Positions 1,959 through 63,222 of a stretch of DNA of 64,000 nt are shown piece after piece. Each line of letters starts with the position of its first letter. Within the stretch, counting starts at the first letter, position 1. The notes beneath the pieces were generated by a model. It was not told where the DNA came from, made no database searches, and worked only from the letters and a program-made list of their open reading frames with translations. A program made the position numbers and the translations under genes. This stretch comes from Vitrella brassicaformis CCMP3155. Its lineage: Eukaryota; Protista; Chromerida. The DNA lies in contig CDMY01000255.1 of assembly GCA_001179505.1 (NCBI GenBank), positions 1 to 64,000 on the forward strand. The letters run 5' to 3'.

Positions 1959-4900
1959 TTAAACAGCATCAGTCTTCCCTTCCTCCTTCCCCACTCCCTC
2001 TCCCCCTCCCCCATCATCTCCTTTGAGCACCATCTCCCTGGCCATCTGTGTGGCCCTCTGGTGGGCCGCCAGGACGGCCGCCCTCTTGGATCGTCCCGTG
2101 GCGTGCTCGAGGGCGGGGTCACGGTGGGAGGGGATGGGGTGCAGCAGCCAGGGGTCCAGCATGGAGGGCAGGGCCGTGGCATCCTCTCTCTTGGTCAGGC
2201 TGTGGATCAGAGAGGACGTGGTGTCCAGCTGCAGCTGCAGGGGCTGCGACATTGACTCGGTCAGCTCAGCCACTGCACACAAAGGCAAAGAAGATTGGAA
2301 GGAATCATAGATTGTTTCAGGAGCAGCGTACCTAGTTTTGGTCCCAGTATGTCTGCTGAGATGCCCTTGGTGATGCTGACGATCGCGGCCTGACACTCAT
2401 CCTCGCCCTTCTCCTGCACATGCATACACACACAGACGGCATAAGAGCTAAGTAAGACACTTGTCCATGCATCTTGCTCTTGTCCCTCTCACCTCTTCAA
2501 GCCATGCATCCAGCTTCTCCGCTGCCTCATCCGCACCCTCTTGGTCCTCTTCCACCTCCCTACCCCTCTCCTCCATCCTGCCCTCTGCCATCCTCTCATC
2601 AGTCACCATCGGCCCCTCACCCATGCCGCCCATCAGCTCGCCGAACGCCGGCCCCGGTGGCCCACCAAACCCACCTCCCCGCCAGCCTCCAGACATGTCA
2701 GGTGGTGGCGGTGGCTGGAAGCGCGGCCCGTAGTCCATGGGCCCCCTTGGCGGAGGATAGTCCATCGGGTGGTGTGGGGGATACATAATGTGCGGGGGCC
2801 TCTCGGGGCCACCGTAGAACGAGTCTGGCGGGCCCCCCCAGTGCCCGCCGCGATCCGACATGGGTGGCGGTGGTGGGGGAGGGGGCCCCTCGTCCTCTCT
2901 GTCCCATCTCCCAGGCCCAGGCCCAGGGCGCCACGGCCGGTCAATGGGCGTCGGGCCCGGCACACGAGGGGGTGGGAGTGGACGAGGCCAGCGGCCTTCC
3001 TGAGGGGGCGGCCTTCGCGGATAGTACGATATCGGCACGCCAGGCCCGGGTTGCTCCTCTTCCTCGCCTCGCATCATGAAGTCCTCCCCTTCACGGCCCT
3101 CCTCTTCTCTCTGCTGTGGTGGCGGGAACTGGCCGAAACCCTCAGACCCTCCAGGTCCACCAGGCCCTTCCCATGGCCCAGGAGGAGGTCGAAAGCCTTC
3201 GCCGAATGGCGGCGGCTGATAGGGTGGCCGAAAGCCGCCGTCCTCCCTGTCGTCCCTGTGCATTACGTGGGGGTAGGGAGGCTCCTCCCTCTCCGGCCGC
3301 ATCATCGGTCGCGGGCGCCATCCAAAGGGCGGCCCGCCCTCGGGATAGAACATCTGCCTGTCCGGTGGCGGGTGGCGGGGCGCACTCGAGCTGCGAGTCA
3401 TCTGTTGGTGATCGTCTGGCTGCTGCTGTGGCTGTTGTTGCTGCGGTGGATGATGGGGCGGGGGTGGTAGAGCGCCATCGGCCATGTGTGGTGGCAAGGG
3501 GCCTGGCTGTGGCGGGCCTGGCGGTGGTGTGAAAGGCGATCGATCCATCTGACCATTCTGCGGGGGCGGGGGCTGGCCGCCAGCCGGGCCAAAAGGAGCA
3601 GGAGGACCACCTGCACGTAACAAACAGAGATAGAAAGACGAATGAATGCGACCATCTCATGGTTCCGTGCATATTCTCACCTTCTCCCATGTCGCTTCTC
3701 GGCACCATCATCGCCCCGCTGCCGCGCGGCCCAGTGCCCATCCACTGCTGCCCATCCTGCCCGCCATCGCCAGCCGGCACTGGGGGCGATGAAGGGATAG
3801 ATGGCGGCTTGCTGCCCTGCTCGATCCACCGACCAGATGCTGTGCGGCGCGCGTGTGGGGCGGGGGTAAGGATGGGAGGGTAGCGACGCGACGGCGGAGG
3901 CGCCAGCCAGTCGGGGGGCGGTTGTTGCTGCTGCTGCTGCATGTCTGGTGGGCCGCTCTCTGGAGAGTGGATGGGCGGTGGCTCGATGGGGGCCTGAGGA
4001 ATCAGCCGAGAGAGAGAAATCAATCTCATGATCCAATTGTCATGGTCTTGTTTCGATCTTACCTGCTGCTGCGGTGGTGGTGGTGGTGGTGGAGGTGGCT
4101 GTCCTCCCTCCTCTCTCGGCTTCTCTCCCTCACCAACGTAGCCCCTCATCCCCTCATGCTGCTGCTGCTGCTGTTGATGTTGCTGCTGTGGGTATTGCCC
4201 CTCATAGGGCCCTGGTGGCGGTCGATACATGCCCTCGTCCATCATGGGCGGCGGGCCCCGCCAGCCAGCACCAGGATGGGACGGCTGACCCTGCCAGGGC
4301 GGCGGAGGGCGGCCGTAGCCGGGATGGTGATGCTGATGCATGTCGGGGGGCGGCCCTTCGTGCGGTGGCATGTCTGCGTCGGGTGGCGGGGGCTGCTGGT
4401 GGGGTGGATGCATTATCAACGGAGGCCGGTCTGACGGTGGCATAAAGGGACGGTGAGGTCCTCGGAAGGGGAAGCGACCGCCTCGAGGGCCGCCGTCCCA
4501 GGGAGGTCTGGGGCCGCCTTCAGGGAACCCGTGCTCACCGCCCTGACCACCAGGGGGCTGCTGCTGCTGCTGCTGCTGCATGGAAACAGGACAGGAGTGT
4601 CACGTACGGCGAGTGATGTGATGTGATGTGATGTGTGCTGTCGTATGGTGGTGTCTGACCTCGTGTTGTTGTGGCGGCCTCCATCCTCTTGGTCTGAGCA
4701 TGGGTCCTCCTCCACCCCCTTCCCTCTCCATCCTGCCCCTGAAGCCACCCCGCCCCCTGCCCCTGCCGCGCGCCTCGCGTGCCTCCCGCGCCTGCTTTCG
4801 CTCCATCTCCTTCTTCTCCCACCACGGGGGAGACCGCCGATTGCCGTCACCTGGGCGATCGCCCTGAGGAGGTCGTTCGCCTTCACGAGGTCGGTCGCCT

Positions 4901-6176
4901 TCCTCACGCGAGTCACGCCTCTCCCTCTCCCTATCCCTCTCCCTCTCTCTGCTCTCCCTGCTGTCTTCGCGTCGCCTGAATCCGCCACGACTGTCGTCCT
5001 TTCCACCGGCCTCCTCACCGCCCCTTGCCGGAGGGTCGCAGGGCTCGCCCACGTCTGGCGCCCTGTCGAAACGATGTGGCCGGTCCTGACCGCGGAACTT
5101 GACGGGCGACCCGACGTTATCCTGCTGCTGCTGCTGCTGGCCGTCACCGCCGCCAAAGCCGCTGCTGACCTTGCCGGCCTCGACATCCGGCCTGTCATCT
5201 TCGGGCTTGGGCTGGTCCAGCTTTGGTGATGATGTGTCCATGATGACGCGACGGGCGGGGACGGGGGGCGTGTCCCGCCTGGGTGACTCGTCCCGACGAG
5301 AAGGGGGGGTGGGAGTGCCGCCACCGGTGAAGCTGTTGGCCTGCATCCATAGATCAGAGCACAAAGACCAGCCGTGAAGTCCGTGATGGGTGGCGCGTTG
5401 TCTTGCTGCCTGCCTCACCCTCGGAGGTTCTCTGTCGCTCCTCCCACGCTCCCGTGACCGTCTGGGCGACCTCTCGCGGTGTCTGTCCCTCGCATCTCTA
5501 TCGTCCCTGAAGCCCCTGTCATCCCTGTCACGCGAGAAGGGCTGATGGCTGTTGTCCAGGTCCCTCTCCCTCTCCCTGTCTCGGTCTGCCCTCCTGGGTG
5601 TGGAGTGGTCGTTGTGGGCGTCGCGGTGCTCCCTGTGCCTGCTGCGGTCGTGGCGGCTCTCATCGTCAGACTCTCGCCTGCGGTCCTTTTCCTGACGATC
5701 CTTGTCCTGAGTAAGGAAAGCGCGTGTGCCTGCCTGTTGTCTGCCTGTCCGTCTGTGTGGGTACGAACCTTGTGTTTGTGCTTCTTCTTGTGCGACCTCT
5801 TGGTGTCGTCACTGTCAGGCGAGGAGCTGACAATCCTGTCCCGCTCATCCCGCTCGCCCGACCGGTGTTTCCTCTTCTTGGCCTTCTTCCGCTCCCTCCT
5901 CCGCTCATCATCCTCCCTAGTATCGCGCTCGCCACGCCTCAGACCCTCCATTGCCTCGTCCACATCACGACCCAGGTGACGCGCCTCAGGAGACTGCATC
6001 CATGAGCCATCCCAATGAAAACAGGTGGCCTTCTCTGCCTTTGTGTGCGTCTATGTGCTTACGTGTACCAGTCCCAGTTCTTCAGCAGGGTCCACCGGCG
6101 GCTCCGATGGCCTCCATCTGTCGTCGCGACTCGCAGCACCGAACCCATCCTCGAAACGAGAACGACACTGTGACAT
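1959..6176 (-). CDS. Long multi-exon low-complexity protein (Arg/Asp/Glu-rich N-part, Pro/Gly/Gln-rich middle, short helical C-terminal region); 3' end approximate
   Basis: Chain of long minus-strand ORFs (5415-5999, 4600-5418, 3142-4581, 2448-3623, 1959-2396) linked by GT-AG introns; probable start MSQCRSRF at 6176; composition typical of nuclear RNA-processing factors; no family recognised. Confidence 0.7.
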
Positions 6177-45860: not shown

Positions 45861-45874
45861 AATGATCGGTCAGG

Positions 45875-46935
45875 TCAGACATCACCCACACGTCCCTCTG
45901 TCTGCCGTGTCCTTTGTGTGTGCCACGTCACCCACTCACCTTCTTCAACAGGTCCTACGCACTCCACCTCACGCACACCCTCATGCACTATGCCGTCCTG
46001 CCCGTCGACGGGTCTCCCCTCCTGACCCTCCCCCGCCTCCCTGTCACCCTCCTCCTCACCACCACCACTCTCCTCCTCGTCATCGGCCTCCTCTCCCTCC
46101 TCTCTCTCGTCCTCCTCGGTGGCCGGGTCGGGCCCCTGGTCGCCAGCTGCTGGCCGCAGCTGAGGCAGAATGGAAGGCGCGCCTGGTGTGGGCGGCTGGC
46201 GTCCGCCATACATAGGGAGCACGGCGCGCTGCATGCCGGCCCGGATGCGGAACACGTCGTCGAGGGTGACGGCCCCGTCCCACACCTCCGCCGGCGTTGG
46301 CTGCCTCTCTATCTGCTGCCTCTCCTGCCCCTCGTCGCCGCTCTCGGGGTCCACCGGCTCCTCTCACGCCGGGAAGGCAGGGACTTAAGCCAGTCGGGGC
46401 CCAGGAAGTCGGCGTACTCGGCCATTACCTCCTGCATGACCCTCTCGTACTCCTCGGCCTCCTGCTGGTGCCGCTTGCACCACTCATCGACCTCGCCATC
46501 GTCGGCCGCTGGTGCAGAGGCAGGCGTCTCGTGAGCCGCTGACGAAGCCGATGGGCCCTCGGGTGGCGGCAACGGCAGTAGGGGGGGTGGCTGCTGCTCC
46601 TCCAAGGCCACGCGATCGGCCTCACTCAGAAAAGCTGAACAGGTGGGGTGGGGGCACAACCAAGGCAGACAGATACACACAGGCACACGTGCGTTGCGTC
46701 CCTTCCTTGATGCCTTCCCTCCTTCTCCGTCATATGCAATGCAATGCAATGCAATGCATACCTATATATTGCGATATGATCACGTAGCCCTCTATCTCCG
46801 CCTCTATCCGTCGGTTGGGCATCCAGGGCCTCACACCTTGGTGTGTACAGCTTCCACGTACCGCATTGTCGTCCACGGAGGTAGCGCGCAGACAGTCGAT
46901 GTACGAGATATCGAAATATAAAATGTAGGCGGCGA
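45875..46935 (-). pseudogene. Partial kinase duplicate (copy K0): ILY cassette plus hinge exon plus acidic insertion, frameshifted
   Basis: Near-identical to 44690-45230 including the intron; AFLSEADRVALEEQQPP...DEWCKR; frame change near 46370. Confidence 0.7.
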
Positions 46936-47146
46936 TCATCAAACAATCTACCCTCACACACAGACTGATGAGATCTTCTTATGGGTTGTTTCGCGTGTCT
47001 CACTCCTTTCGCTGCGGTGTTCTTCTATGAACCTGGGCAACCATGGGGCAAAGCCGGGCTGGTCTTGCAGGTCCTGCAGCAGCATCCCCACCCTCTCCCT
47101 CGTTCACTGTCATCTCCCGCAGCTGGGGGCCCTTCTCGGTGAAATA

Positions 47147-48920: not shown

Positions 48921-49329
48921 TCTTTACAAGCGCTCCTGCATCTGCTGCTGCCCGGGCACATAGGGCAGGTGGACCTGCTGGTGGGGGAACGGGTTGCGAA
49001 TACGAGTGGGCAGCAGACCGTCGCAGCCGGCCATCTGGGGTCCGATAGTGTAGCTGGTGGCTGTCGGCTTGTGCTGCTGCCTTCGGGGACGTTGTGCTCC
49101 TCTGCTGAGGCCATGATGCTGTTATACACGTGACTGAATGCGTCGTCCACGCCGCCCTTCCTCAAGCGCATGCAGGCCGGCGTGCTTTCCATGATGGGCA
49201 TGCCGCTGCAGATGCGGCGTCGTCTCAGTGGACTGCTCGGTGCTGGTGTGCATGGTGCGGCCGTGGTGGGGCGGCGGAGAGTGCGATCGGCTGACGGGGT
49301 CGGTGGACTGGAAGGATGCGGTGAAGTTA

Positions 49330-50860
49330 CTGGGCCGGCGAGGCCGGGAGAGAGGGAGAGAGGGCAAGAGGGCGGGAGGGCGAGAGGGAGGGGTGGCGAG
49401 GCTGCTGCGGGTAGGGAGCAGACTTCTCATGCTGGGTCGCGGCAGCTGACGCAGGGGGTTCGCCTTTCCCTGGTCCCTCTTGAGACTCCTTGACACGTCC
49501 GTTCTGGCCTGACGGTGGAGAGGCGGCGCCCTCTGCCATTGCCTAGAGAACACAGCACAGCGCAGCACAGCACAGCACAGCAGAGAGCCTCAAGTGTTGT
49601 GTAACTGGATTGATGTGCGCATGATGTAGACACGTACCTTCTCCAAATCGTCTTCGTACTTGTTGATCATTATCTTCATATCCCTCCCCTCCACCATCCC
49701 CTGGACCGACTCCAGGAAGGCCTTGTACTCCTGCAGTGAGTGAGCAGGCAAAAATACTGTTAATGGTCTGCCTGCCAGTGTGCCGGTGTGCCTCCCGTCC
49801 CTTGCTCACCGCAGGGTGCTCGCGCGACATGCGCAGGAACTTCAGCACTTGGGCCTCCCTGGAGTCGGCGTTGACGTCGGGGACGTCAATCCCTCTAGAC
49901 ATGAGGGTCTGCCTCATGGCACTGCATACATGCATACAGGCAGGCAGGCAGGTTGGTGTTGTGTTGTGTTGTATTGTGTTGTGTTGTGTTGTATTGTGTT
50001 GTGTGTGTGTGCGTGGTATGCATGCCATTGTGGCGTTGAGGAACGGTTTGGCCGCACCCTTGGGCGGCTTCTTGCCCTTGTTGTCTGCACACATGGATCC
50101 ATCGATAGAATCCATGTCATGTATGCATCCACGCATGCGAGTCTATCCACGCATACCTACCGTTGATGGCGTCGATGTTGATACGGCTGAAGCGAAAACG
50201 ACGGCTGCCGTGCGCCTGGGACTGCGATGCGCTCGAAGAGACACCAACGCTAACCTGACCAGAACAGACCAAGCCGCGGCAGTTGTATGGAGGAATGTGG
50301 CACTCACAACTGGACGTGTGAATCTGCGTGCCTCTTGCTGACCTCAGGCACTGCACACTCGGGCGAAGCACCATCGGAATCGCAATCGTTGATGTCTGGC
50401 GTGTGTGATGGGCGTGGCGGTGTGTGTACTTACCGTTAGGTACGGTGGACTGAGCGGCAGCTGCTGGTGCATCAATCCACCCAGTGCAACCACACACACA
50501 CAACACACATGCATAGACCAGGATGTCTGCCCGTGTCTATTCGCTCGTCGATGAGTAGCCACTTACGCGTGGCCTGGTCCACGTCCACACTGCCCGACGT
50601 CTGGGGTACCTGCAAAAAAAACAAAACATACACACACACAACACGTGTTTCCTCGTGTGTGTGTGCATCTTCCCCCGTTCACCTCTTCAGTATTCTCCTG
50701 CTGGTTGCTGTGAGGCTCCTGTTCGTACTCCGGGTTGGCCTGGTGAGCATCTGAGGCGTCCTGCGTGTACTGGTCAGTGGCGGCCGGAACGTTCCTGCCC
50801 ATGTTGCCCGCATCGACGTTGGTGAGGAAACTCATCTGCAAGAGCATGAAGCCATCCATG
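49330..50860 (-). CDS. Hypothetical multi-exon gene or pseudogene containing the MRQTLMSR module
   Basis: Exons AMRQTLMSRGIDVPDVNADSREAQVLKFLRMSREHPA and EYKAFLESVQGMVEGRDMKIMINKYEDDLEK with clean introns; duplicated at 57220-57500. Confidence 0.45.
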
Positions 50861-52143
50861 CAGCATGCTCTTCCCGACGTGCGTTGTTGCTGGCTTATGG
50901 CTTACGTTGGGGAGCGAGCGGGACTTGGCCAGCATGGTTGTGGTGGACGCCATCTCTATCGTCACGAACGGCCCGCGCTGAGCAGCAACGAAGACATGCA
51001 GCCAGAGAGACATGACGTCCCGCTTTCTCTCCTCCACCCTCCACCCTCCTCCCTCCCCCACCCGCCCTTCCTACCATCTCCTGAGCAGACTTGATGAGGA
51101 ACTCGCTAGCCTCGTCCTCAGCTCGCTACCCTCGCGGGTCCGCCGAGCCGCTCGACAAGTGGCCTTTGGGGCCTCCCTGCTACTGAAAGTCGACCCTTTC
51201 AGCATCCGCGCGGAGACATAGAAGGAATCGACGCCAAAATATAAAATGAAGGCAGCAATTGGTCGCCTAAGACAGAGACACAGATACCCGCACACAGAAA
51301 CAACATAAGTCACGGACATCACATACAGGGGGGTCGTGTGTCGATTGCGATGAATGTGTGATGGCCGGCCGACTGACCGAGGACTGACCGAGATTGGATT
51401 GGGGGTGGTGGCGAGGAGGGGTTCGTATGCGCTGTGGACGACGACGCCAACACGCTGCTCCTGGAGGTTACGTGAGGAGACGTTGCTTGCTTCTCACACG
51501 TGACCAGAAACCGCCTGCACACACAGAGACAAACCATTCATCAAAGGACGCATGTACACATGTGACGCGTGTGTGTGTCTCTCACCTGTCTGTAAGGTAG
51601 GCATGTGCAGGGGATCGATGGATGACAAGTATGTGGGTGGGGGGTGGGTCGGTGATGGAACGAAAAAAAAAAACTCAGTCAGTTGGTGTGCAGTGCACGC
51701 ATGGCATGGACCCCCCAACTCAGACAGCCAGCCAGCCAGCCACATAGACAGACAGAAAATAGACGGACGTGCAGACGGACGATCGATAACATAACTGACG
51801 CGAACAGACGGGCATCCAATCCACACAAACAGACAGACGTGACACCAGCACCACACTCATGACATGACATGACATGACATGACATGACATACACGAGCAC
51901 GTCCATCCACGCACACGGCCGCTCGCCCTCCCGACCCTGTTTTGCTTTTTGTTTTTTCTTTTGTTTTGGCTTTTCTGTTTTTTCTTTTGTTTTGGCCTTT
52001 CTGCTTTTTTTGTTTGGCTTTTGTCCCCCTCGATGGCTGCTCTCTCCCTCTCCTCCTCTCTCCTCTCTGCTGGCCCTCTCTCGCCATCGCCCCACCTCGA
52101 CAACAGTGGTGCTAACTTAGGCAAACACGCACATGCACTACGT

Positions 52144-53630
52144 CTCTGCTACGCCTCTTCCTCTTCTCCCATCCCGCACGTCAGTGGCATGGGTGGGCGT
52201 CAGGTGCGGCCAGCCCGGGCGGCGCCGCGAAGTGAGTAGCGCCCCTCTTGTATCCCCTCCGTGTCCTTGATCTCACTCCGCAGCCGCGACCTCTTGTCGC
52301 TGGGGCCCTCCTGCTGGTGTGGGTGGTCGCCGTGGGGGTCAGCGTCGCCCCTCTTGCCTTCCTGGCTGCCGCCGGCGCCCATGCCCGCCTTGCCCGCTCC
52401 CGCCGCTGCCTTGGCCTTGGCTTTGGCCCTCGCGCGCTTCTGGCACCGCTCGTCGCTGTCCGTGTGGGCGAGGTTTGGGGACGATGGCGTGAGGGGAGGG
52501 GGTGGTCGTCATCGTCCACAGCCATGGCGTTGTCGAAGCGGTTCAGCTGGTGCGCCGGACGCTTGGCGACCTCCATCGCCTGGTTGGCCTCCCGCGACGC
52601 CGTCTCGAAGATGACGATGGCACCCTGAACGAATCAGTCACGGACATCACCAACAAAGATGGTGGGGAAAACATGAACACATGGATGTGTGCGCGCGTTG
52701 AGTGTCTCTGTTGTCCTTACCGAGAGGTAGTGGTCGAGTCCGTGGACGTAGGCCTCTCCCGCTGCTGTGATGCGGGCAGCCAACTCGTGGCTGTTGATGA
52801 GGCGGTGGCGGCTGCGGCTGCGAATCGAGTTGACATCGGCCCAGTAGCCCCGCTCCAACGGCACTGCGGGCACCCAGTGGGGGAAGGAGTGGTCGTCGCA
52901 GCTCCACTCATCGTGTACACACTCGCATGCGGACCTTGTGTGTCAATCGGGGGCTCAGAGGGCCACTACCGTACAGGATCGACAGAGAGGGGAGTAAGAC
53001 ATATAGATCAGGGTTCCTGAGAGACACAACAGACACACAAAGGCCACATAAACAAGGCTCTTCCTTCTGTCTGTTTGCTGGTTGCTCACCAGGTGTGTCG
53101 GTCGGGCGGTCAGATGAACGCATTATGTATTTGGACGACTCGGCGAGGGCAACTGAATGGATGGCAGACGGCAGACACATGATGCACTCTCGTCTCTCTG
53201 TGTATCGTGCGTGTCATCAAGTGCGATGCCCACCTGATGCGTCGACAGCACGAGACGGTGACACACTCATCGGTGTCGGACGGTGGGTGGCATGTATGGC
53301 GTAGTTGGCGGGCCCCCTCGCAATGGATTTCAGACGCACTCGGTGAGTGCGCTCTGGCGATCAAGCGGCTGTACGAGTCGTCGCGCGATGCTGCCTTCCT
53401 GGTGAGCTGCTCAGAGCATGTCGGTGTGCCGTGGAGACCCACGTCAACACCGCGTTTCCATCATGCCGGGCATCGACACCCTGACACACACCACACAGAG
53501 AGAGAGGGTTGGTGGGTGTGCGGCAGAGAGAGGGGGCTGAGGGTGTGCGAGAGATGGTACCTTACCTTGCGCCGGATCGCACTGAGAGGAGTAGCATGCA
53601 GGCGGCTGACAGACAGCAGACCTGCATGAG
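52144..53630 (-). CDS. Hypothetical multi-exon protein; bounds approximate
   Basis: Spliceable exons ...HSFPHWVPAVPLERGYWADVNSIRSRSRHRLINSHELAARITAAGEAYVHGLDHYLS|GAIVIFETASREANQAMEVAKRPAHQLNRFDNAMAVDDDD... Confidence 0.4.
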
Positions 53631-54487
53631 ATGAGCATAAACAACACACATGGAGGGATTCAGCATGCTAAATGCTGTTCATTGGTGAGTGCCGTGTGTC
53701 TGACCTGCTGGCTGCCTGCAGTGGATGAGTGGTGGTCCTCTCTCTCTCCCTCTGTCGACTTCTGTTCTCTCCCCTTCATGTCCCCTCTTCCCCCCGGCAC
53801 ACGCAGTCTCTCTTCCTCAGGTTGGCTGCCAGCCCAAAAGCACCCGGGCACCCAGGCACCCTTGATGGAAATGACGACAGAAATGACAATGACAATAACT
53901 AAAGGACGCACGAACGAACTCAAAGGGGCAGACAGGCGGCAGGAAGGCGGACAGGCGAACGCAAAATGCACCAATCATGTCATGGAGCAGCACAGCCAGG
54001 CCATGGATGGGGAAAAGGGGACATTCATGCAGCCATCACAAAGCTTTTCGGAGAGCACCATACCATGGCCAGAAAGCCGGCCATGGCCTCTCCCTTTTCT
54101 TGTCTTTTTTTGCGGCAGCCATGCCATGACCTCTATGCATCCAAGGGAGTGACCCTCCGCCTTCTCGCTCCACCCACAAAACTCACCATTGCATTGCAGC
54201 CACCCAGCCAGGCACCCCGGTCGTCAGCCAGGCACAAGATACCCCAGATACCCCCCCACTGCACAAGAACAAAACCTCAGCCCCACACATACCAGCCGCT
54301 GCTGCCGGTGGCGGACTGTGTGTGTGGGAGGTCTGCTGGGGGCGAGGTGGGGCGAAGGACTATCTCGTCAACACGACTGATGGAACACAAGAGGCAGAAA
54401 GCATCTGGTTTGTATGTGCTGGACGCCTCACTTGTCTTTGTGTGTATCTGTGTGCGTTTGGCTGACCTCTAGGCACGACTGAAATGA

Positions 54488-54935
54488 CTATGCGAACCTC
54501 TTCGGCCACGACCACGCAGCGTCACCCGATGGTTGGAGCCGATGGTTGCAGCAGACGGAGAAGGGGTTGAGGAAGGATCCCCAGAGCCCCTTCTTGCCCG
54601 CCTGCTTGGCCTTGCTCCCCCGCTTCTGCTTGCCCTCGGTGCTGGTGTGGGTGGTCTTCGTCTTGGTGGTGGCACCGTCCCTGGGCAGCTCGTACTTGGC
54701 CGCGATGAAGGCCGCGACTGCGGCATCGATGCCCAGGTCATGCTCGTCCACCGCCCGCTCCTTCGGCTGCTCGCCACGCCGCCTGCTGATGGCCTCCTCC
54801 CTCTTCTTGTGCCACGCCTCGTTGGCCGCCTTGAGGGTCATCCAGGCCTCGTACGAGTCCTCGCTCGTCCGATCGTCGATGCCCTCCTGGAGTTTCTGGA
54901 TTCTGCGGCGGTAGGCCTCGATGATCTCATGCAAG
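54488..54935 (-). CDS. Hypothetical terminal exon (helical, charged)
   Basis: HEIIEAYRRRIQKLQEGIDDRTSEDSYEAWMTLKAANEAWHKKREEAISRRRGEQPKERAVDEHDLGIDAAVAAFIAAKYELP; protein-like composition and codon usage. Confidence 0.45.
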
Positions 54936-55969
54936 TGCGAATTGTGATGCACACACACATTGGAAGAGAGGCGGCATGAGAGGAATGCAAAGCGGGTGGT
55001 GCCTTCCTTCCTCCCCGACCTGCCTCGGCCAAAAGGTCCTCCGCCTTCCTCTGACGCACCATACATACACAATGCCCTTCTCAGTCTCACCAAAACAAGG
55101 GCGTGGTGTGTATACAAATGAACGTGTGCATCAGACACACCTGGTCTGGTCGTGGGGGCCTTCCCTTGCTCCATGAGCCAACAGTCGTCCTGCAGCTAGG
55201 CCAAAATATGCTCTCAGTGGCCGCCGGAGCGGCCAAGTATGCGAAGAAAAAAGAGAAGAGAAGAGGGGAGACATGAGCAAATCTGTCTGAGAGCCTCTTT
55301 CACCTACGTACCTGCGGCGCCGCCGGGGATATCAAAGCGAATTATAACAGCCAATCTTGAATGAAGTACGTAGGAGAGGCCCACCGATGTAAGGTGTAAG
55401 CGGCGATCGCTCTGCACACACAGACACGAGACGCGTGCAGGTCGATCAGTCTGCTTTGACAGCTCACATTCAATGCGCACACGGCTGGGAAGGCAGTGCG
55501 GTAGAGGGTCGTCATCAGTCGATCAGATATAAAATGTAGCCAGCGATCTGCGCACCAGCAACAAATACATACACACCGTACCGGGTCCTGGTCCTTCTCA
55601 CGCTGCCCACACACAAGACGGGCAAGGTGTGCTTGTCTCTCCTTCTTCTCTCGCCTCGCGCACCTCTTCGGTCGAGCGCTGCGCCAACTGCAGACTCTCG
55701 GGTCTCGGTGAAGTTGCTTTCGGCCTGAATCAGCCACACAGAGAGCACAACACACTATCTTCCTCCAAGTCATATTGTGCACGCAGGTCAATGAGTTCGA
55801 TCACTTGGCTCACCGTCACGGTGCAATTGAGGTGCTTATGGGGCTTGTCCCACTTCAACGCGCCACTGACGTATTGACCCGGCCTCTTCACACACACACA
55901 CACACTGTGCTTCTCTGCGTACTTGCGTGTGTGTGTGTGTGTGTATGTGCATCTGTGAGCGCGTCCATC

Positions 55970-56385
55970 TCCCCCTCCACCTTGGCAGCGACGTGTCTGT
56001 CGTAGAGCGCCCGGCCGTCACTGCTCTCGATAAAGAAGGCCCCCGCCTCCCCGTAGATCTCTGTGTTGGCGCTGCTGCCGTCGGGGTGGTCCATATGAGG
56101 GGCGATCAGCAGGGCAGCCGACAGTGAGCAGACGGGGCACGTGTCTGCGGCCTCGCTGAATGGCAGGCGGAGGGCGGGGGTTGGCGCCACGGTCGTGCTG
56201 CTGGTGGTGGCGTGCGGCTGATGACGGCCTCGATGGTGGCTGCGACCTTTCTGAGGGCAGCAGGGTCGGCGTGCGGGCCCGGCACTGGGGCGGGGTCGAC
56301 GTCACGTAGCGTCGACGGCAGGGAGGGAAGCGGCTGCTGTGTCTCCGACCGGCGCCTCGCCATCTCAAAGTCAATCCAGTGGTCT
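55970..56385 (-). pseudogene. Kinase C-lobe fragment (copy K3), paralogous to 43210-43590
   Basis: HWIDFEMARRRSETQQPLPSLP...LRLPFSEAADTCPVCSLSAALLIAPHMDHPDGSSANTEIYGEAGAFF; frameshifted. Confidence 0.75.
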
Positions 56386-56569
56386 CTACTCGATATGCGC
56401 GCGACCACACCATCATTGCTTGGCCAACATGCGTCTCTCGGTGGCGGCCGAAGCCGCCAAAGATGCGTCAACAGACAAGAAGGGACACGATCATGAAGTG
56501 CCTTCATCGTCTTCCTTTCTCCCTCACTTACGTACCTGGCGGGCCGCCGGGCGCAGATTTGGATGGAGT

Positions 56570-56850
56570 AGGTGCATCGCAGCCGTATAAGTCCACAAAT
56601 ATAAGACGAGAGACGGCGATCTATCTGCACACACAGACACGAGACACGCACACGGGAGTTGATCACTATGGTGTATGTCGACAACTTACATCCGATGTGC
56701 GAATGGCCAGACAGCGGTGCGGTCCAAAGGCGTCATCGGTCGATCAAAATATAAAATGTAGCCAGCGATCTGCACACCACCCGAAAGCACCGACACGTGT
56801 TAACAGAAATCCACCTGACTGATTTCTGTTCCTTCTATGTATAGGATCTT
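56570..56850. repeat. Near-identical duplicate of 48530-48840 (MKDPIHR exon, ILY cassette, intron)
   Basis: Long shared strings, e.g. GCCGTATAAGTCCACA..ATAAGACGAGAGACGGCGATCTATCTGCACACACAGACACGAGACAC. Confidence 0.85.
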
Positions 56851-57219
56851 TCATACCTGATACCCTCCGGCCCTCCCCGCCTCCACGCAGCAGCACCCCT
56901 CCTCCGGTGGCGTCCAGGTCACCACCCACACACCGGCCCTCCGCTGCCAGTGGGCCAGGTCCCACTGGGTGAGGGCGCTGGCATAGTAGCCATCGGCGCC
57001 CTCACCCCACTCCCCAGCCCTCACGAGCACCTTCTTGGTGGTGCCGGCAGGCTGCTGCTGGTGCTGGTTCTGGTCGTCGGTGGAGGTCTTGGCAGCTTGC
57101 TTCCTTCTGCAGAACGGCGGATTGACCAAAGAGCACAGCACAGCAGAGCAGAGAGCATCAGTTAATTAATTGCGTCTTGTGTGCAGATGGATGTGTGTGC
57201 GATGTACGTACGTACCTGC

Positions 57220-57500
57220 TCGGCGTCGTCAGCGTACTTGAGCATCATCATCTTCATATCCCTCCCCTCCACCGTCCCCCGGACCGACTCCAGGAAGGCC
57301 TTGCACTCCTGCAGCAAGTGAGCAGGCAAAAATACTGTTAATGGTCTGCCTGCCAGTGTGCCGGTGTGCCTCCCGTCCCTTGCTCACTGCAGGGTGCTCG
57401 CACTTCATGCGCAGGAACTTCAGCACGTGGGCCTCCCTGGAGTCGGCGTTGACGTCGGGGACGTCAATCCTTCTAGACATGAGGGTCTGCCTCATGGCAG
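57220..57500 (-). repeat. Duplicate of the MRQTLMSR two-exon module (49625-49925) including its intron
   Basis: AMRQTLMSRRIDVPDVNADSREAHVLKFLRMKCEHPA / ECKAFLESVRGTVEGRDMKMMMLKYADDAEQ. Confidence 0.8.
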
Positions 57501-57759
57501 CGGCGGCTGGCGTACGGGCGGGCATCTTCTCCTCTCTCTCTCTCTCTCTGAGAGCTTGGGATCTATCTGGTGCACAGACAGACACGAGACACGCACACGG
57601 GTGCCTTCCTTACTCCCCGACCTACCTCGGCGAAAAGGTCCTCCGCCTCCCTCTGACGCACCAAACATACGCACACACGAAGGAGGAATCCATTCACTCA
57701 TTGCGGCGGCCAGCCACGTGTATGCCCTCTGCGCTGCCCACCTTGGCGGCTTCGTCTGT

Positions 57760-58010
57760 CTAGTTGGAGTTGTCAAACTCAGCCTTGAGGAACTCGTATG
57801 CCTCGGACAGCTCCTGGAACTGCTCCTTGAACCCGGCAGGCTTGTCTTGGTGAACCTTCTGCACACACACACACACAAAGCCCCGCATGCCGCGCGATAC
57901 GCTGCACCCCTTCTCTCTTTCTAGCGGCGCTGGTTGTGCTGTGAGTACCGAGTTCAGGCCTAGCACATCCCAATAGCGGCGGCGCGTATCGTCTGACGCC
58001 ACTGACATTG
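57760..58010 (-). pseudogene. Degenerate DnaJ (J-domain)-like fragment
   Basis: RRYWDVLGL...KVHQDKPAGFKEQFQELSEAYEFL; HPD replaced by HQD and helix II not recognisable. Confidence 0.55.
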
Positions 58011-58299
58011 TGGCTACTCTGCTTTGTCCACAACCGCGGCGACTAACAGCCACTGCACACAGACGTGCAGAGACAGAGAGATGCTGCTCTCTTTCTCCTT
58101 CCCCCTCCGTCTCTATCTTTACCTTTTCTTCAGGCCGTCATGATTGATTGATGTCCATTCTGGTGCGGGGGCAGAGGGCAATCGATCCCAACCGATATAA
58201 AATGAAGGCAGCGATTCTCGAGGCCTGACACACACACGCAGAGATGAAGGGATGCCTGTCAGTCAGTGTCGTGCGTGCGGTAGCTAGGCACCTCTCGTT

Positions 58300-59115
58300 T
58301 GAACGCAGCGCTCCGGGCCTGTAGCTTCTTCTTGGCGGCCTGCCAGGCCTGGATGGCAGCATACACACAAATGAATGTGGATGGATGCATGGATGGATGG
58401 ATGGATGGATGGACGTACGGGCCGGCGTCTGGTGTGACGGTCTGCCTGTCTGCTTTGCTTTATGTTTACCTTTTCTTCTGGCCGTGACGTCGGGCTGGCC
58501 CATGACTGTCCAAGCTGCCCACATCTCGCCGTCCCTACCTGCTGCTTCACCAACTGCTGCCTTCACCATGAAAGGGCTGCCGCCCACTCTACCCCGGGGC
58601 ACGGATCGTTCCCGTAAACCTCATCAACTTGATGAGGCGGGGACCCCCAAGGCCCTAATCAGTCCTCACCGCCACCAGCAGCAGCGTCTCGGCTCGGGTG
58701 ACTCCTCCCTCCTCAGGAGCCGCATCGGCGGCACCATGGTGGGGGGCGGCAGGGGGAAGTGCGGTGGTGGTGGTGCTGCTCGTGAGGGAAGAGGGAAGTG
58801 GCGGGTTGGTGCGGCTGCGGGTGAGGGCAGGGCGTGGCGGGGTGGTGCTGCTGGGAGGGGAGGGGGAGGGAAGGGGTGCTGGTATGGGAGGGGCAGGTGC
58901 AGTGCTGGTGGTGGGAGGGGCACGAACGGGGGCGGGACGTGTGAGCGCTGCCTGAAGTCCATGGGCCCCCTTGGCGGAGGATAGTCCATCGGGTGGTGTG
59001 GGGGGTACATGATGTGCGGGGGCCGAGTGATGTCCATTCTGGTGCGGTGGCAGGGGCCAATCGATCCCAACCAATATAAAATGAAGGCAGCGATTCACAC
59101 TGATGAATGAAGCAC

Positions 59116-59150
<35 letters not shown>

Positions 59151-61530
59151 GGAGAGACGGATGGCTGCAGTCGGGCATCGTGTGCGTGCAGCTCTCGTCG
59201 CCCACCTCGTCAATCAGTCTACACAATCGACAGATGCAGTCGTTTAGACGCTGACACAGGCGTTGATCATCAGGCGGTGTGGAGAGTGGGAGTCGCCGCG
59301 TGGCTGTTCTGGTCGCCCTGTGTTGGCCCTGTGTTCAGCTTCTCGTGGTGGCCGCACGGGAAGGGGGCGTCGCCTCGGCGGTGTCGGTGGCGGCCGGAGT
59401 GTGTGCAGACGCCAACTGCAAATACATATGAGACCACAACAGGACAGGAGGGAAAATGAACCATGAAGGCGATGGAAGGGAATCTCTGTCAGTCAGTGTT
59501 ATGCGTGCGGTAGCTAGGCACCTCTCTTCGTAGATGGCCCAGCAGCTCATGGAGACGTCCTTTGTCGGTTGGCCGACCTGACTTGCCAGACGCCTTTGTC
59601 GCCTTTCACCCGTGTCCACCACTCCCACTCGTCGGGTGTGGGGTTGTACTTCCAGCCATCCTTGGCCGCATCCTGGGCAACGACCATCACGCGAGAAGGA
59701 CCGATGGTTGTTGCCCATCTCCCTCTCCCTCTCTCTGTCTCGATCTGCCCACCTGGGTGTGGAGTGGTCGTGTGCGTCGCAGTAGGCAAGCAGCTCTTGT
59801 TCGAGGGCAGCGATGCGGGCCTGTAGGTCCTTCTTGGCGTCCTGGATGGCAGCATACACACGAATGAATGTGTCCAGATCGATTGATAAGCGTACGAGGG
59901 GCCAGCGTTAAGCTTGTGTGTGAAGGTCTGCTTTGCTTACGTCTCGCTGCACCACCATCCCCGCCAGTCTCGTCTGCACACATCAATGCACAATGCGCAG
60001 ATGGACATATCGCATCGCGTGCAGAGAGAGAGCATCGAACGACTGTGCATGGTCGCACCTGTCGGCTCGCGAGTGTGTCGATGCTGTCCCTCGCCAAGGC
60101 GGCGGAGGGCGGCCGTAGCCAAGATGGTGATGCTGAGGCATGTCAGGGGGTGGCCCTTCGTGCGGTGGCATGTCTGCGTCGGGGGGCGGGGGCGCGTCGC
60201 GATAGGCACGCAGCTCGTTTTCGAGGGTACGGATGCGTTTCTGGATGGCAGCATACACACAAATGAATGTGTCCAGATGGATTGATAAGCGTACAGGGTG
60301 CCAGCGTCAAGCTTGTGTGTGAAGGTCTGTCTGTCTGCTTTGCTTACCCCTCGCTCCCTCGCCAGCTGCACCAGCTTGTCCTGCACACATCAATCAATGC
60401 ACAAGAAATGCCCAGATGGACACATCGCATCGCGTGCAGAGGGAGAGCATCGAACGACATAGGTCTGTGCATGGTCGCACCTGTCTCTCCTGGAACTTCT
60501 CGATGCTGCCCATGGCACGGAAGAGCGCCTTTTTGAATACAGACACCATTCTTTGTGGATCTCGTTCTTTGTCCCCACGGTTGCTGCCTGAAGACTCACT
60601 CTCGTAGTAGTAGTGCTCTTTGATGAACATCTCCAGCCGCCATCTCGGCCCCTTTAGCAACTCTGCATCGTAAACCGACACGGACATGGAAAGAGCCGTG
60701 CACACGCACCTAGCACTCGTGCGTCCTGACTAGCGGGCATTCCCTTGTGACTCACGGCGCGCCTCCTCTGCGATTATAAATTGGTGCTCATCGAACGCGG
60801 CGGTTTTCTCAGCGGTGGACGCCGTCATGAAGTCGACTGGCGCCGCCGCTGCTGCTGCTGGTCGTCATCGCCGCCAAAGCCGCTGCTGTAGGCACGCAGC
60901 TCTAGTTCGAGGGCAGCGATGCGGCTCTGGATGGCAGCATACACACAAATGAACGTGTCCAGATGGATTGATAAGCGTACGGGGGGCCAGCGTTAAGCTT
61001 GTGTGTGAAGGTCTGCTTTGCTTACGTTTCGCTCCTTCGCCAGCTCCACCAGCCTCTCCTGCACACATCAATCAATGCACAACAAATGCGCAGATGGACA
61101 TCACATGCAGAGAGTGAGCATCGAACGACATAGGTGTACTTATTGTGCATGGTCGCACCTGTCTCTCCTCGAGCTTCTCGATGCTGGCTTTGGCGCGGCG
61201 GAGCGCCTCTTTCAACCCCCTCGACTCCCTTGCACGCACAGGCACACAGACACCATTGTGGATCTCGTTCATTGTCCCCACTATTGCTGCCTGAAGACTC
61301 ACGCTTCCAGTGGTGGTGCTCTTCGAGGAAACTCTCCAGCCGCCATCTCGGCCCCTCTATCAACTCTGCATCTAAACCGAAACGGACATGGAGAGATGAC
61401 GTTCAACACTCGTGCGTCCTGGCTAACGGGCTTTCTCTTGTGACTTACGGCGCGCCTCCTCTGCGATTGCAACTTTGTGCTCCTTCAACGCGGCGTTCTT
61501 CTTAGCGGCGGACGCCGTGAGGAGGTCGAC
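58300..61530 (-). repeat. Tandem degenerate multi-exon units sharing the GGATGGCAGCATACACAC(A/G)AATGAA acceptor/exon cassette
   Basis: Cassette at about 58350, 59845, 60243 and 60930; encodes AAIQxRIxxLExELxAY; paired upstream exons GPRWRLE(S/M)F at about 60640 and 61340. Confidence 0.75.
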
Positions 61531-62162
61531 TGGCGCCGCCGCTGCTGCTGCAAGTAGTGCTGCTGGTAGCGGCGACGGCATTCTCATCTCAGGGGGCGGC
61601 ATGGCGGCGACTCTAATCTGCTTTTCTCCTTCTCTCAAACGCGAGCTTTTGAAAGAATCGCCGCCGTGGCCTGCGGGCACAGGACAGGACAAGCACAGGA
61701 CAAGCATCAACAAAGAGAAAGAACAGGTGCATACGTACTTCCTGTGTCTTCATGGGTACATCTTAGTATGTCCGTGCGTTGACGTCTGTTGTCCAGGTCT
61801 AGCTTCTCATCCAACAGCTGAGGAATAGATACATGATACATCCACGCAGATGTCAGGCAGAACGTGGGAGAAGTGCGAGTGTGTAGGCTCATACTTTAGA
61901 GATATGCGCAACCTCCTAGTAGCGCAGTATTGTTGAGAAGGTCTCCATACGGAGACGTTGCCAAACACTGTCAAAGCCACACATGTCCCAGATACGCACA
62001 GCCGAGGGGCATACCTCTTATGTACTTGTACGCCTCACCACGGTTGCCGGTCAGGAAATCCTACATTCAACGCGCAACGTCACAGCTTTCGCTGTACACC
62101 TGAAGCAACAGAGAGAAACAAATTGATGAAAGGCATTCACACATGCGTGGCGTTCCCCTTGA

Positions 62163-63222
62163 CTAGAAGGTCATAAGCTGAGACACACAGCAGAATACAG
62201 TATGTTCTCTTATTTCTCTCCACATCTGGGACTCAGACTGGGAGATTGTATTTGTAAACTGTTTGAGGGAGTCATTCTGCTTCTCAGAGGAGCGGACAAG
62301 GAATGGCAGAGCAGAAGTCTGAATCTTGACAATCACATTCGTTTTGCTGAACCTGGTGGGAGTCGTCGAGATAGAGAGACGGCCTCTTCGAAAATACCTC
62401 CACCTGCGGACAGAGGGAGGCACATCAAAATGGGTCACACATTCATCTGTGACATCCCAAAGAGACTTAACGCACGAGGCCGCGCACCTCACCAAATGAC
62501 TACCAAATGTGCTACAACCTTCTTCGTCGCTGCTGAACAGCATGTCCTCATCCTCGTCTTTGCCGCTGGGCATAGGAAAGCCATCCTACAACACCGGCAC
62601 ATGCAGCAGGCACACACATCGTCACACCGCACCACCGCACCACCACACACTTGTACTGACCTGCTGGAGCCTCAGGTTTTCTCGAAAAAAGAAGGAAGAT
62701 GCCGTCGCGCTTCGCCGACACCAGGCAGTCGTCAGGCGCTCCGCTGAAGCCAGGGCGCGGCCTCCTTGTTGGGAAGGGAGGTGGACGAAAGAAGTGGCGC
62801 CGACATTCGCGCAAGAGGGCAGGCGCGGGACGGGATGATGCGGGCCACATGGGATAAAGACCAGCAAAAAAGACGAGGATACGGAGGAGAAGTGGCGGGC
62901 GGAAGGCAGAAGAGCAGTGGAATGCCCGAAATGCCTGGAAATTGTGTTCAGAACGGTCTTTTCTCGTCCCGTCTCCTGCGACGAGATTTTCACGTGCGAG
63001 CTTTTTCGCTTTCTGCGAGCTTAGAAATTGCGTTCTCTTTCTCTCCCGTGTCCCCTGCGGGTATTGGCGGCGAAGAGGACGGTCAGGTGCCTGATCTTTA
63101 AATTCATTCATGAATCCGGATGGCTCGCCGGGATTGGCACTGACTTCTTCCTGATTGCTCGGCAGTGTCAAGCTCGTGTTGATGAACATGAACATTCTTT
63201 CACGTGCACTTAGTTTCATCAA
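62163..63222 (-). CDS. Possible hypothetical two-exon ORF
   Basis: Long open frames 62548-63222 and 62163-62573 joinable through CAG|GTCAGT...GTTGTAG; no recognisable domain. Confidence 0.3.

What the first reader, a model, noticed from the sequence alone, without database searches (positions are those of the whole stretch)
58950..60900. Four non-collinear fragments of the Pro-rich gene 55 kb away are captured behind repeated cassettes
Direct matches, all in the same orientation: 58957-59023 matches 2732-2800 (PPHIMYPPHHPMDYPPPRGPMD); 59690-59780 matches 5531-5622 (DHSTPR.ADRDRERER); 60095-60192 matches 4295-4392 (PPPPDADMPPHEGPPPDM.QHHH.GYGRPPPPW); 60851-60888 matches 5131-5167 (SSGFGG.D.QQQQ). 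Three are joined in frame within a few bases of the same junction (ELRAY/ELLAY) of a repeated coiled-coil-like exon; the fourth follows an ILY cassette. Their order (5150, 4350, 5600, 2770) differs from the donor order. Inference: repeated templated capture of local gene pieces (Helitron/Pack-element-like transduplication, template switching or microhomology repair) building new chimeric exons.
Basis: seen in the sequence. Interest (0 to 1): 0.8.

Follow-up and report, generated by a model that had tools for sequence, protein, structure and literature searches.

The report
Gene snippets pasted into duplication joints
In the alga Vitrella brassicaformis, four short DNA copies (44-111 letters) of one proline-rich gene sit exactly at the joints of a young, rearranged gene array 55 kb away; they are most likely scars of error-prone DNA copying, not of a jumping element, and two of them now form part of annotated proteins.

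Summary
Four same-strand matches (44-111 bp, 86-94% identity, E 1e-11 to 1e-38) link 58.9-60.9 kb to one gene at 2.0-6.2 kb. Nothing else in the first 41 kb matches.

The organism is Vitrella brassicaformis CCMP3155, contig CDMY01000255.1.

The recipient is a young tandem array of an orphan four-exon unit: A and B complete, C and D partial. Three fragments lie at the unit joints, 12-30 nt beyond the ELRAY exon. That stretch is homologous to a 5' splice site in two other copies. The fourth fragment lies between an "ILY" cassette and a Pro-rich module.

- **Junctions:** overlaps are 0-1 nt at some ends and 4, 11 or about 12-20 nt at others.
- **Mobile elements:** I found no terminal inverted repeats, target duplications, poly-A tails or transposon proteins.
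- **Annotation:** fragments 4 and 1 are coding, in the donor's frame. Fragments 2 and 3 lie in introns of CEL97339.1.
- **Divergence:** exons of the units differ more than their introns (pN/pS about 2.4).

Best reading: templated patches laid down by replication template switching or break repair, in one burst. The Helitron or Pack-element reading is not supported. This scan has already described similar same-direction patchwork loci elsewhere in this genome. No expression evidence was obtained.

The parts
1962..6175 (-). Donor gene. About 9 exons and about 1,200 codons by my own reading. Arg/Asp/Glu-rich N-terminal half and Pro-rich C-terminal half. No Pfam family.
   Evidence: Long stop-free exon stretches with GT-AG introns. 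Pfam gave nothing. Word search and Atlas gave nothing.
5528..5627 (-). Donor segment of fragment 3 (RDAHNDHSTPRRADRDRERER...), inside one exon.
5124..5167 (-). Donor segment of fragment 4 (SSGFGGGDGQQQQQ), inside one exon.
4284..4393 (-). Donor segment of fragment 2 (PPPPDADMPPHEGPPPDM...GYGRPPPPW), inside one exon.
2720..2800 (-). Donor segment of fragment 1 (PPHIMYPPHHPMDYPPPRGPMD), inside one exon.
60825..61602 (-). Annotated 141-aa gene, which is unit A (homology with unit B spans 60889-61551). Its last exon reads ...ELELRAY followed by fragment 4 and stops at 60825.
   Evidence: Gene table of L001 (window coordinate = 70688 minus L001 coordinate, checked). Frame logic.
60845..60888 (-). 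Fragment 4: filler at the joint of unit A to unit B. Left overlap about 1 nt. Right overlap 11 nt (GCAGCAGCAGC) with the start of the unit.
   Evidence: Unitigs cover 60681-61012 with 0 mismatches.
60203..60858 (-). Unit B: exon 1, intron, exon 2, intron, exon 3, intron, exon 4 (ELRAY). 79.6% identical to unit A.
60083..60193 (-). Fragment 2: filler at the joint of unit B to unit C. It stands where exon 1, intron 1 and most of exon 2 would be. Left end is blunt. Right overlap is CAGC (7 of 8 with GGGnCAGC).
59784..60082 (-). Unit C, partial: tail of exon 2, intron 2, exon 3, intron 3, exon 4 (ELLAY).
59687..59783 (-). Fragment 3: follows exon 4 of unit C. Its first 12-20 nt are imperfectly homologous both to the donor and to the recipient's own intron-start sequence.
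   Evidence: Unitigs cover 59619-59927 with 0 mismatches.
59335..60687 (-). Annotated gene CEL97339.1 (P0001, 147 aa). It comprises unit B exons 2-3, unit C exon 3, the 'DAAKDGWKY...' exon and the 'LASAH...' exon. Fragments 2 and 3 fall in its introns.
59025..59096 (-). ILY cassette copy, 93% identical to 58146-58217. It abuts fragment 1.
58944..59024 (-). Fragment 1: filler between the ILY cassette and a Pro-rich module. Both ends have 0-2 nt overlap, plus 3 unassigned bases on the left.
58666..59037 (-). Annotated single-exon 123-aa gene: MDITR, then fragment 1 in the donor's frame, then the Pro-rich module. The module (58666-58941) is a copy of 42307-42404 enlarged by a 39-bp tandem repeat.
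58246..58460 (-). Unit D, partial: intron 3 tail and an exon-4-like exon ending ...KRE, followed by the intron start GTGCCTAGCTACCGCACGCA. This shows the likely ancestral state of the junction site.
59475..59526 (-). Second copy of the same intron start, downstream of fragment 3.

Best explanation
The four pieces are templated patches (filler DNA). They were copied from one gene on the same chromosome into the breakpoints of a young set of tandem and segmental duplications, by error-prone DNA synthesis that switches templates (FoSTeS/MMBIR-type replication switching or synthesis-dependent break repair).

Proposed sequence of events: synthesis through the orphan four-exon unit repeatedly broke off within about 20-30 nt just past exon 4, at what was ancestrally an intron start. 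The free end then copied 44-111 nt from the Pro-rich gene 55 kb away. It landed back upstream in the unit (at exon 1, then at the tail of exon 2), creating units A, B and C with a different donor piece at each joint. A fourth patch joined an ILY cassette to a Pro-rich module 650 bp further on.

The events belong to one burst, possibly one multi-switch episode. Some patches were afterwards read as coding sequence.

Shown: the copies, their positions at unit joints, the junction overlaps, the absence of mobile-element marks, and the annotated reading frames. Inferred: the copying mechanism, the single burst, and the direction from donor to recipient.
For: 1. Reality and specificity. There are four matches at E 1e-11 to 1e-38, and all fall in one 4.2-kb gene. 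No other match exists between 41-62 kb and the first 41 kb. If donors were drawn at random from those 41 kb, all four falling in one gene has probability about (4.2/41)^3, roughly 1e-3.

2. Position. Each fragment lies exactly where homology between paralogous units ends. A|frag4|B and B|frag2|C are seen. ILY|frag1|Pro-module is seen. Paralogous flanks lack the fragments, which gives the direction donor to recipient.

3. Junction overlaps. Values are 1 and 11 nt (frag4), 0 and 4-7 nt (frag2), about 12-20 nt imperfect (frag3 left end), and 0-2 nt (frag1). This mixture is typical of microhomology-driven switching or end joining.

4. Clustered breakpoints. Three breakpoints fall within about 20-30 nt in a unit of about 690 nt.

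5. Similar ages.
- Fragments versus donor differ by 6-14%.
- Introns 2 and 3 of the units differ by 4-9%, and intron 1 by 18%.
- The two ILY copies differ by 7%.
- Neighbouring collage pieces differ by 8-14%.

6. No mobile-element signature. There are no inverted repeats beyond microsatellites, and no Pfam transposon domain in the large ORFs or called genes. The published census gives only 18 kb of Helitron and 1.5 Mb of transposable elements in this 72.7-Mb genome (PMC4501334).

7. The fragments differ from the donor, so they are not assembly joins. Unitigs from two studies bridge two of the four.

8. Templated insertions at duplication junctions are a known outcome of such mechanisms (PMC5120786, PMC3638133, PMC7025897; listed, titles and abstracts only).
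Against: - Four of the seven assessable junction ends have 0-2 nt overlap, which fits plain end joining as well.
- No secondary structure that could stall a fork was found at the common breakpoint.
- A single episode predicts that the exon-4 ends of A, B and C and the intron-start copy at 59502-59522 were identical at birth. That copy is instead identical to the one in unit D and only about 70% like A, B and C. At least two rounds are therefore needed.
- Intron 1 is more diverged (18%) than introns 2 and 3 (4-9%), so the units may not all be the same age, or part of them was homogenised.
- All three ELRAY joints keep the donor's reading frame (chance about 1/27) and all four pieces are sense-oriented (1/16). 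This hints at selection or at a strand-aware process that the model does not need.
- The rest of the genome could not be searched for further copies.
Confidence: 0.5

Rival explanations
1. Serial, independent double-strand-break repairs at a fragile site. The stretch just 3' of exon 4 breaks recurrently. Each break was mended by end joining or synthesis-dependent repair that pasted in filler copied from the same gene. The first captured piece (fragment 3) may have supplied homology that drew the donor gene into later repairs.
For: - Several junction ends are blunt or have 0-2 nt overlap.
- Unit B's joint keeps about 9 nt (CGCGACGC) that also begin the fragment-3/donor homology, suggesting nested events.
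- At least two rounds are needed in any case.
- Earlier follow-ups on other loci of this genome favoured repeated faulty break repair (unverified here).
Against: Independent events would need to use one 4.2-kb gene four times (about 1e-3 even if donors are limited to the window), and three breakpoints within about 20-30 nt would have to recur. Divergences are too similar to order the events.
Confidence: 0.25
2. RNA-templated patches. Pieces of the donor's mRNA, or cDNA made by a LINE reverse transcriptase, were used to patch breaks, as in class 2 templated sequence insertions of humans.
For: - All four pieces are exonic and in sense orientation.
- There is no target duplication and no poly-A, as in class 2 insertions (PMC5110952).
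- LINEs make up 0.63 Mb of this genome.
Against: No piece spans a donor intron, so nothing specifically points to RNA. About 86% of the donor gene is exon, so four exonic pieces are expected by chance. The duplicated units themselves carry introns and are DNA-level copies. An earlier follow-up reported intron-containing pieces at another patchwork locus (not checked here).
Confidence: 0.1
3. A selected, possibly targeted, tail-diversifying process. The site after the ELRAY exon is a preferred acceptor where foreign coding pieces are added in frame to give new C-terminal tails to a fast-evolving orphan protein family.
For: - Three of three ELRAY joints are in the donor's frame, and all pieces are sense-oriented.
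- Two fragments lie in annotated coding sequence.
- Unit exons change faster than their introns, with pN/pS about 2.4.
- Conserved cassette motifs punctuate the array.
Against: - The numbers are small (p about 0.04 for frame).
- All three frames of these GC-rich pieces are open, so the frame assignment is soft.
- Fragments 2 and 3 are intronic in the annotated model.
- The A-to-B joint runs into a stop after 7 codons.
- No expression evidence was found.
- No relatives of the family exist anywhere else.
Confidence: 0.08
4. Transduplication by a mobile element (Helitron or Pack-type).
For: Non-collinear, same-orientation gene pieces next to repeated cassettes look superficially like captured fragments. 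Helitrons do exist in the genome (18 kb).
Against: - No terminal inverted repeats.
- No target-site duplications at the fragment ends.
- No transposase or Rep/Hel within about 10 kb.
- The 'cassettes' are intron-containing gene units in tandem.
- The composite is single-copy in the 70 kb examined.
Confidence: 0.03
5. Chance low-complexity similarity or an assembly artefact.
For: The donor is Pro/Arg/Gln-rich. Fragment 3 contains a GA-rich stretch that attracts many unrelated unitigs.
Against: E-values reach 1e-38 in a 64-kb search space. There are no comparable hits to other low-complexity parts. The 6-14% divergence excludes collapsed or chimeric assembly. Unitigs from two studies bridge two junctions.
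Confidence: 0.02

Closest known systems
Complex tandem duplications with templated insertions (FoSTeS / microhomology-mediated break-induced replication; 'chromoanasynthesis'-type events)
   Same: Duplication junctions carry short stretches copied from nearby sequence on the same chromosome. Microhomology is present at some joints. There are several switches in one small region, and the copies are in direct orientation.
   Different: - The scale is far smaller: units of 0.3-0.7 kb and patches of 44-111 bp.
- The event is fixed in a free-living alga rather than seen in patients or tumours.
- All patches come from one gene.
- Some joints are blunt.
- A single event is not demonstrated.
Filler DNA / class 2 templated sequence insertions at repaired double-strand breaks (PMC5110952)
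   Same: Patches of tens to hundreds of bp copied from a distant transcribed region, without target-site duplication or poly-A.
   Different: Here the patches lie at duplication joints rather than at simple insertions. They cluster within 2 kb and share one donor. An RNA origin can be neither shown nor excluded.
Pack-MULE / Helitron gene-fragment capture in plants
   Same: Non-collinear fragments of host genes brought together and sometimes expressed as chimeric transcripts.
   Different: No element termini, no target duplications, no element-encoded protein, and no multiple copies. The carrier is a tandemly duplicated ordinary gene.
Patchwork loci reported by this scan elsewhere in the Vitrella genome (s1-205508, s1-221653)
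   Same: Same-direction collages of DNA-level copies of pieces of other genes in arrays of fast-changing orphan genes. A conserved 21-nt cassette motif is present.
   Different: Here all pieces come from a single neighbouring gene, and three lie at successive joints of one tandem array. Those reports were not re-checked here.

Membership tests
Helitron / Pack-element transduplication | Defined element termini: terminal inverted repeats with target-site duplication for Pack-type elements, or 5' TC and 3' hairpin plus CTRR for Helitrons. | tested here: not met
   Only microsatellite-type inverted repeats occur in 56.5-63 kb. No duplicated target bases flank any fragment. The degenerate Helitron end motif was not scanned, because it would not be informative on its own.
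Helitron / Pack-element transduplication | An autonomous partner or element-encoded protein nearby, and several copies of the composite element. | tested here: not met
   No transposase or Rep/Hel Pfam hit in ORFs or called genes. The composite is single-copy in the window plus a 6.7-kb extension. Genome-wide copy number is not testable here.
FoSTeS/MMBIR-type complex duplication | Copy-number gain whose novel junctions contain sequence templated from nearby loci. | tested here: met
   The A|frag4|B and B|frag2|C joints of the tandem array carry donor sequence from 55 kb away on the same contig.
FoSTeS/MMBIR-type complex duplication | Microhomology at the switch points. | tested here: inconclusive
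   Three ends have 4-7, 11 and about 12-20 (imperfect) nt. Four ends have 0-2 nt. One end could not be assessed.
FoSTeS/MMBIR-type complex duplication | All switches arise in one replication episode. | not testable with these tools
   Similar divergences are compatible with this. The intron-start copy at 59502-59522 argues for at least two rounds.
Class 2 templated sequence insertion (RNA-derived patch) | Patch derived from a transcript, shown by a removed intron. | not testable with these tools
   No fragment spans a donor intron.
LINE-mediated (class 1) insertion / retrocopy | Target-site duplication, poly-A tail, T-rich insertion site. | tested here: not met
   None of these is present at any of the four fragments.
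Gene conversion between paralogues | Homology flanking the converted tract, with collinear donor and acceptor. | tested here: not met
   Homology stops sharply at the fragment ends, and the order is non-collinear.

The most novel reading that the evidence does not exclude
Vitrella has a genome-wide, strand-consistent process that pastes short pieces of expressed genes into preferred sites at exon ends or intron starts of fast-evolving orphan gene arrays. This locus would then be a caught-in-the-act example in which the pasted pieces are kept in frame and selected as new protein tails, that is, a natural exon-tail shuffling system rather than random repair scars. It might also account for part of the 13 Mb of 'unclassified repeats' reported for this transposon-poor genome.
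Probability: 0.12. Interest if true: 0.8.

Novelty: new member of a known kind. Interest (0 to 1): 0.45.

Why it matters
This is a clean, fixed, base-pair-resolved natural example of how template-switching repair can duplicate exons and stitch pieces of an unrelated gene onto them in one stroke. Two of the pieces are already inside annotated proteins. The organism is a free-living relative of apicomplexan parasites whose genome is poor in mobile elements.

Together with other patchwork loci seen by this scan, it suggests that such repair scars, rather than transposons, are a main source of new gene structures and of 'unclassified repeats' in Vitrella. As a single locus it illustrates a known mechanism rather than revealing a new one.

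Tried and rejected
- **Pfam** on donor exons, recipient exons and neighbouring ORFs gave nothing, apart from a weak DnaJ hint at 57760-58053.
- **Rfam** on 57-62.5 kb gave nothing meaningful, so the conserved introns are not a known RNA.
- **DNA folding** of the common breakpoint showed no hairpin better than shuffles.
- **HMMER** of unit B exon 2 against 1.84 billion representatives found only the locus's own protein. The word search with P0001 also found only itself.
- **Donor searches:** the word search with a 485-aa stop-free donor stretch found nothing, because it was flooded by low-complexity words and the length window excludes a protein of about 1,200 aa. The Atlas search of the donor's last exon gave no usable hit.
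- **Metagenome scan** for the back-translated HHPMDYPPPRGPMD motif gave no hit.
- **Exact look-up** of the 123-aa product found it absent from the collection, although the gene table lists it.
- **Reads:** run X15, which I only guess to be RNA, shows only 21-25-nt low-complexity hits. This is no evidence of expression and no proof of silence. Only contigs were available, so starts, strands and levels cannot be read.
- **Splice enumeration:** a brute-force enumeration for the 141-aa model timed out. A restricted one gave 16 candidates, the most plausible having an extra 70-76-nt intron in exon 2.
- **Rejected readings:** a collinear paralogue of the donor, gene conversion, a LINE retrocopy, and a mis-assembly.
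- **Selection signal:** I treat the pN/pS above 1 cautiously. It rests on 6 synonymous against 47 nonsynonymous changes. Intron 1 (18%) is as diverged as the nonsynonymous sites, so relaxed constraint with slow synonymous sites remains possible.
Full report
**What and where.** The window is eukaryotic, about 58% GC, with short GT-AG introns. An exact protein match places it in Vitrella brassicaformis CCMP3155, assembly GCA_001179505.1, contig CDMY01000255.1. Locus L001 is the reverse complement of the window, with window coordinate = 70688 minus L001 coordinate (checked).

blastn of 58-62.5 kb against the window gives four plus/plus matches to 2.7-5.6 kb:
- 58944-59024 with 2720-2800: 93.8% over 81 bp.
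- 60083-60193 with 4284-4393: 91.9% over 111 bp.
- 59687-59783 with 5528-5627: 86% over about 100 bp.
- 60845-60888 with 5124-5167: 93.2% over 44 bp.

A more sensitive search of 57-62 kb against the first 41 kb finds only these four above noise. The rest of the array (41-57 kb) has no such match. The matches are therefore specific, and all fall in one gene.

Unitigs from runs of two studies bridge 59619-59927 and 60681-61012 without a mismatch. The 6-14% divergence from the donor also excludes a chimeric assembly.

**The donor.** Positions 1962-6175 on the minus strand hold a gene of about nine exons and roughly 1,200 codons by my reading. The N-terminal half is Arg/Asp/Glu-rich and the C-terminal half Pro-rich. 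It has no Pfam family, and I could not retrieve its annotated product. Each of the four donor segments lies inside a single exon, so none can tell a DNA template from an RNA template.

**The recipient.** On the minus strand, 61.6 to 59.8 kb is a tandem array of one four-exon unit.
- Unit A is 61551 to 60889.
- Unit B is 60858 to 60203 and is 79.6% identical to A.
- Unit C is a partial unit (60110 to 59784) that starts in the tail of exon 2.
- Unit D is a fourth partial copy at 58460 to 58246.

Fragment 4 lies exactly between A and B. Fragment 2 lies between B and C, where exon 1, intron 1 and most of exon 2 would be. Fragment 3 follows exon 4 of C.

Fragment 1 sits 650 bp further on. It lies between an ILY cassette (59096 to 59025, 93% identical to 58217 to 58146) and a Pro-rich module that is a copy of 42404 to 42307 enlarged by a 39-bp tandem repeat. 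The paralogous flanks lack the fragments. This, together with the donor's long uninterrupted reading frame, gives the direction donor to recipient.

**The shared junction is an old intron start.** In unit D and in a further copy at 59502-59522, the exon-4-like exon ends ...KRE and is followed by GTGCCTAGCTACCGCACGCA, a plausible 5' splice site. In A, B and C the homologous bases read CTGC(G/T)TGCCTA..., which encodes 'LRAY'. The GT has become CT and the exon reads on into whatever follows.

The three breakpoints lie about 12, 20 and 22-34 nt into this stretch. 'Capture within a few bases of ELRAY' is therefore correct, but the site is the end of the duplicated unit in formerly intronic DNA.

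**Junction anatomy**.

| Fragment | Left end | Right end |
|---|---|---|
| 4 | about 1 nt overlap | 11 nt (GCAGCAGCAGC), shared by the donor and the start of the unit |
| 2 | blunt | CAGC (7 of 8 counting GGGnCAGC), shared with exon 2 |
| 3 | 12-20 nt imperfect homology between the donor and the recipient's own intron-start sequence | not assessable |
| 1 | three unassigned bases | 0-2 nt |

There are no target-site duplications and no poly-A.

**No mobile element.**
- Inverted repeats in 56.5-63 kb are only microsatellite matches.
- No transposon domain appears in the large ORFs or in the genes called on L001.
- Rfam gives nothing.
- The genome paper reports only 1.5 Mb of transposable elements. 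Its supplement lists 18 kb of Helitron, 0.63 Mb of LINEs and 13 Mb of unclassified repeats (PMC4501334).

**Annotation.** The gene table for L001 lists three relevant models.
- A 141-aa gene at 61602 to 60825. This is unit A. Its stop lies in the frame that reads ...ELELRAY-SSGFGGDDDQQQQRRRQSTS, so fragment 4 is a coding C-terminal tail in the donor's frame.
- CEL97339.1 (147 aa, 60687 to 59335). It joins exons 2-3 of B, exon 3 of C and two downstream exons, and leaves fragments 2 and 3 in introns.
- A single-exon 123-aa gene at 59037 to 58666. It starts MDITR and continues with fragment 1 in the donor's frame.

The models come from Augustus with RNA-seq intron hints. I could not see the hints. 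The one run that might be RNA (X15) shows nothing here. The unit has no relatives: HMMER against 1.84 billion representatives and the word search return only CEL97339.1 itself.

**Tempo and selection.**
- Between units, introns 2 and 3 differ by 4-9% and intron 1 by 18%.
- Exons differ by 14-45%.
- For A against B, pS is 0.076 and pN is 0.18, a ratio of 2.4. Fisher p is 0.03, or 0.0015 against synonymous plus intron sites.
- For the 3' half, exons against flanking introns give p of 0.007 (A-C) and 9e-7 (B-C).

There is thus no purifying selection on the proteins. This means either diversifying selection or relaxed constraint with unusually conserved introns.

Fragment-to-donor divergence (6-14%; 9 synonymous and 16 nonsynonymous changes) is in the same range as the intron, ILY-copy and neighbouring collage divergences. 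It all looks like one period of rearrangement. The neighbouring 55.97-57.67 kb is itself a condensed, collinear collage of pieces from 43.2, 48.5, 49.6 and 55.0 kb.

**Interpretation.** Four features fit templated patches laid down during replication-based template switching or break repair:
- one donor gene used four times;
- patches exactly at duplication joints;
- clustered breakpoints;
- mixed microhomology, direct orientation and similar ages.

This is a known class of event (PMC5120786, PMC3638133, PMC7025897, PMC5110952).

A single multi-switch episode would neatly explain the repeated breakpoint and the single donor. However, the intron-start copy at 59502-59522 groups with unit D rather than with A, B and C. 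At least two rounds are therefore needed, and serial repairs at a fragile site remain a serious rival. An RNA template cannot be excluded. The in-frame, sense arrangement (3 of 3 and 4 of 4) and the fast exons keep open a selected 'new tail' reading.

**Relation to earlier notes.** The scan has already followed up similar same-direction patchwork loci and a conserved 21-nt cassette motif in this genome. I confirmed nine minus-strand copies of that motif in this window but did not re-test the other loci.

**Limits.**
- There was no whole-genome search and no raw RNA reads.
- The donor product was not retrieved.

Noticed in passing
window 59784-61551 (units A, B, C): Exons are far more diverged than the introns between them. 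The 33-nt exon 3 is 55-79% identical while the flanking introns 2 and 3 are 91-96% identical. pN/pS is about 2.4 for A against B. This is a hypervariable-exon, conserved-intron pattern in an orphan gene.
   Followed up: partly
window 42618-59094, minus strand (nine sites): The 21-mer ATCGCTGCCTTCATTTTATAT (0-3 mismatches) occurs nine times, always just after a splice-acceptor-like AG, with divergent flanks. The DNA motif is better conserved than any reading frame through it. From memory it faintly resembles the dinoflagellate and Perkinsus spliced leader. That resemblance was not tested.
   Followed up: partly
window 55968-57673: A condensed, collinear collage of four pieces copied from 43184-43589, 48494-48818, 49564-49921 and 54998-55071, at 86-92% identity and all in direct orientation. 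It looks like a skipping re-copy of the preceding 12 kb.
   Followed up: no
window 57760-58030, minus strand: Two small exons encode a J-domain-like peptide (…YWDVLGL… / …KVHQDKP…FQELSEAYEFLK). The Pfam DnaJ match is only weak (E 0.01).
   Followed up: no
window 42909-46750, minus strand: Repeated long ORFs carry a kinase-like or phosphotransferase-like motif (…HGAGW(I/V)HGDANPQNIMV…) but have no Pfam hit. They are duplicated at 79-92% identity within the array.
   Followed up: no
window 61215-61290 (unit A exon 2): Relative to unit B, unit A has a net 25-nt insertion that begins GT and ends AG and breaks the frame. The annotated 141-aa model seems to need an extra intron of about 70-76 nt here.
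   Followed up: partly
window 58754-58853: A 39-bp tandem repeat (2.7 copies) enlarges the Pro-rich module relative to its paralogue at 42307-42404.
   Followed up: no
window 57600-62400 (runs X9-X12): Marine sediment metagenome runs from 2025 hold 7-18% of the sampled 31-mers of this stretch. Close wild relatives of this strain may be present there.
   Followed up: no
window 19314-19613: A 300-N assembly gap lies inside the micropeptide gene array noted by others.
   Followed up: no
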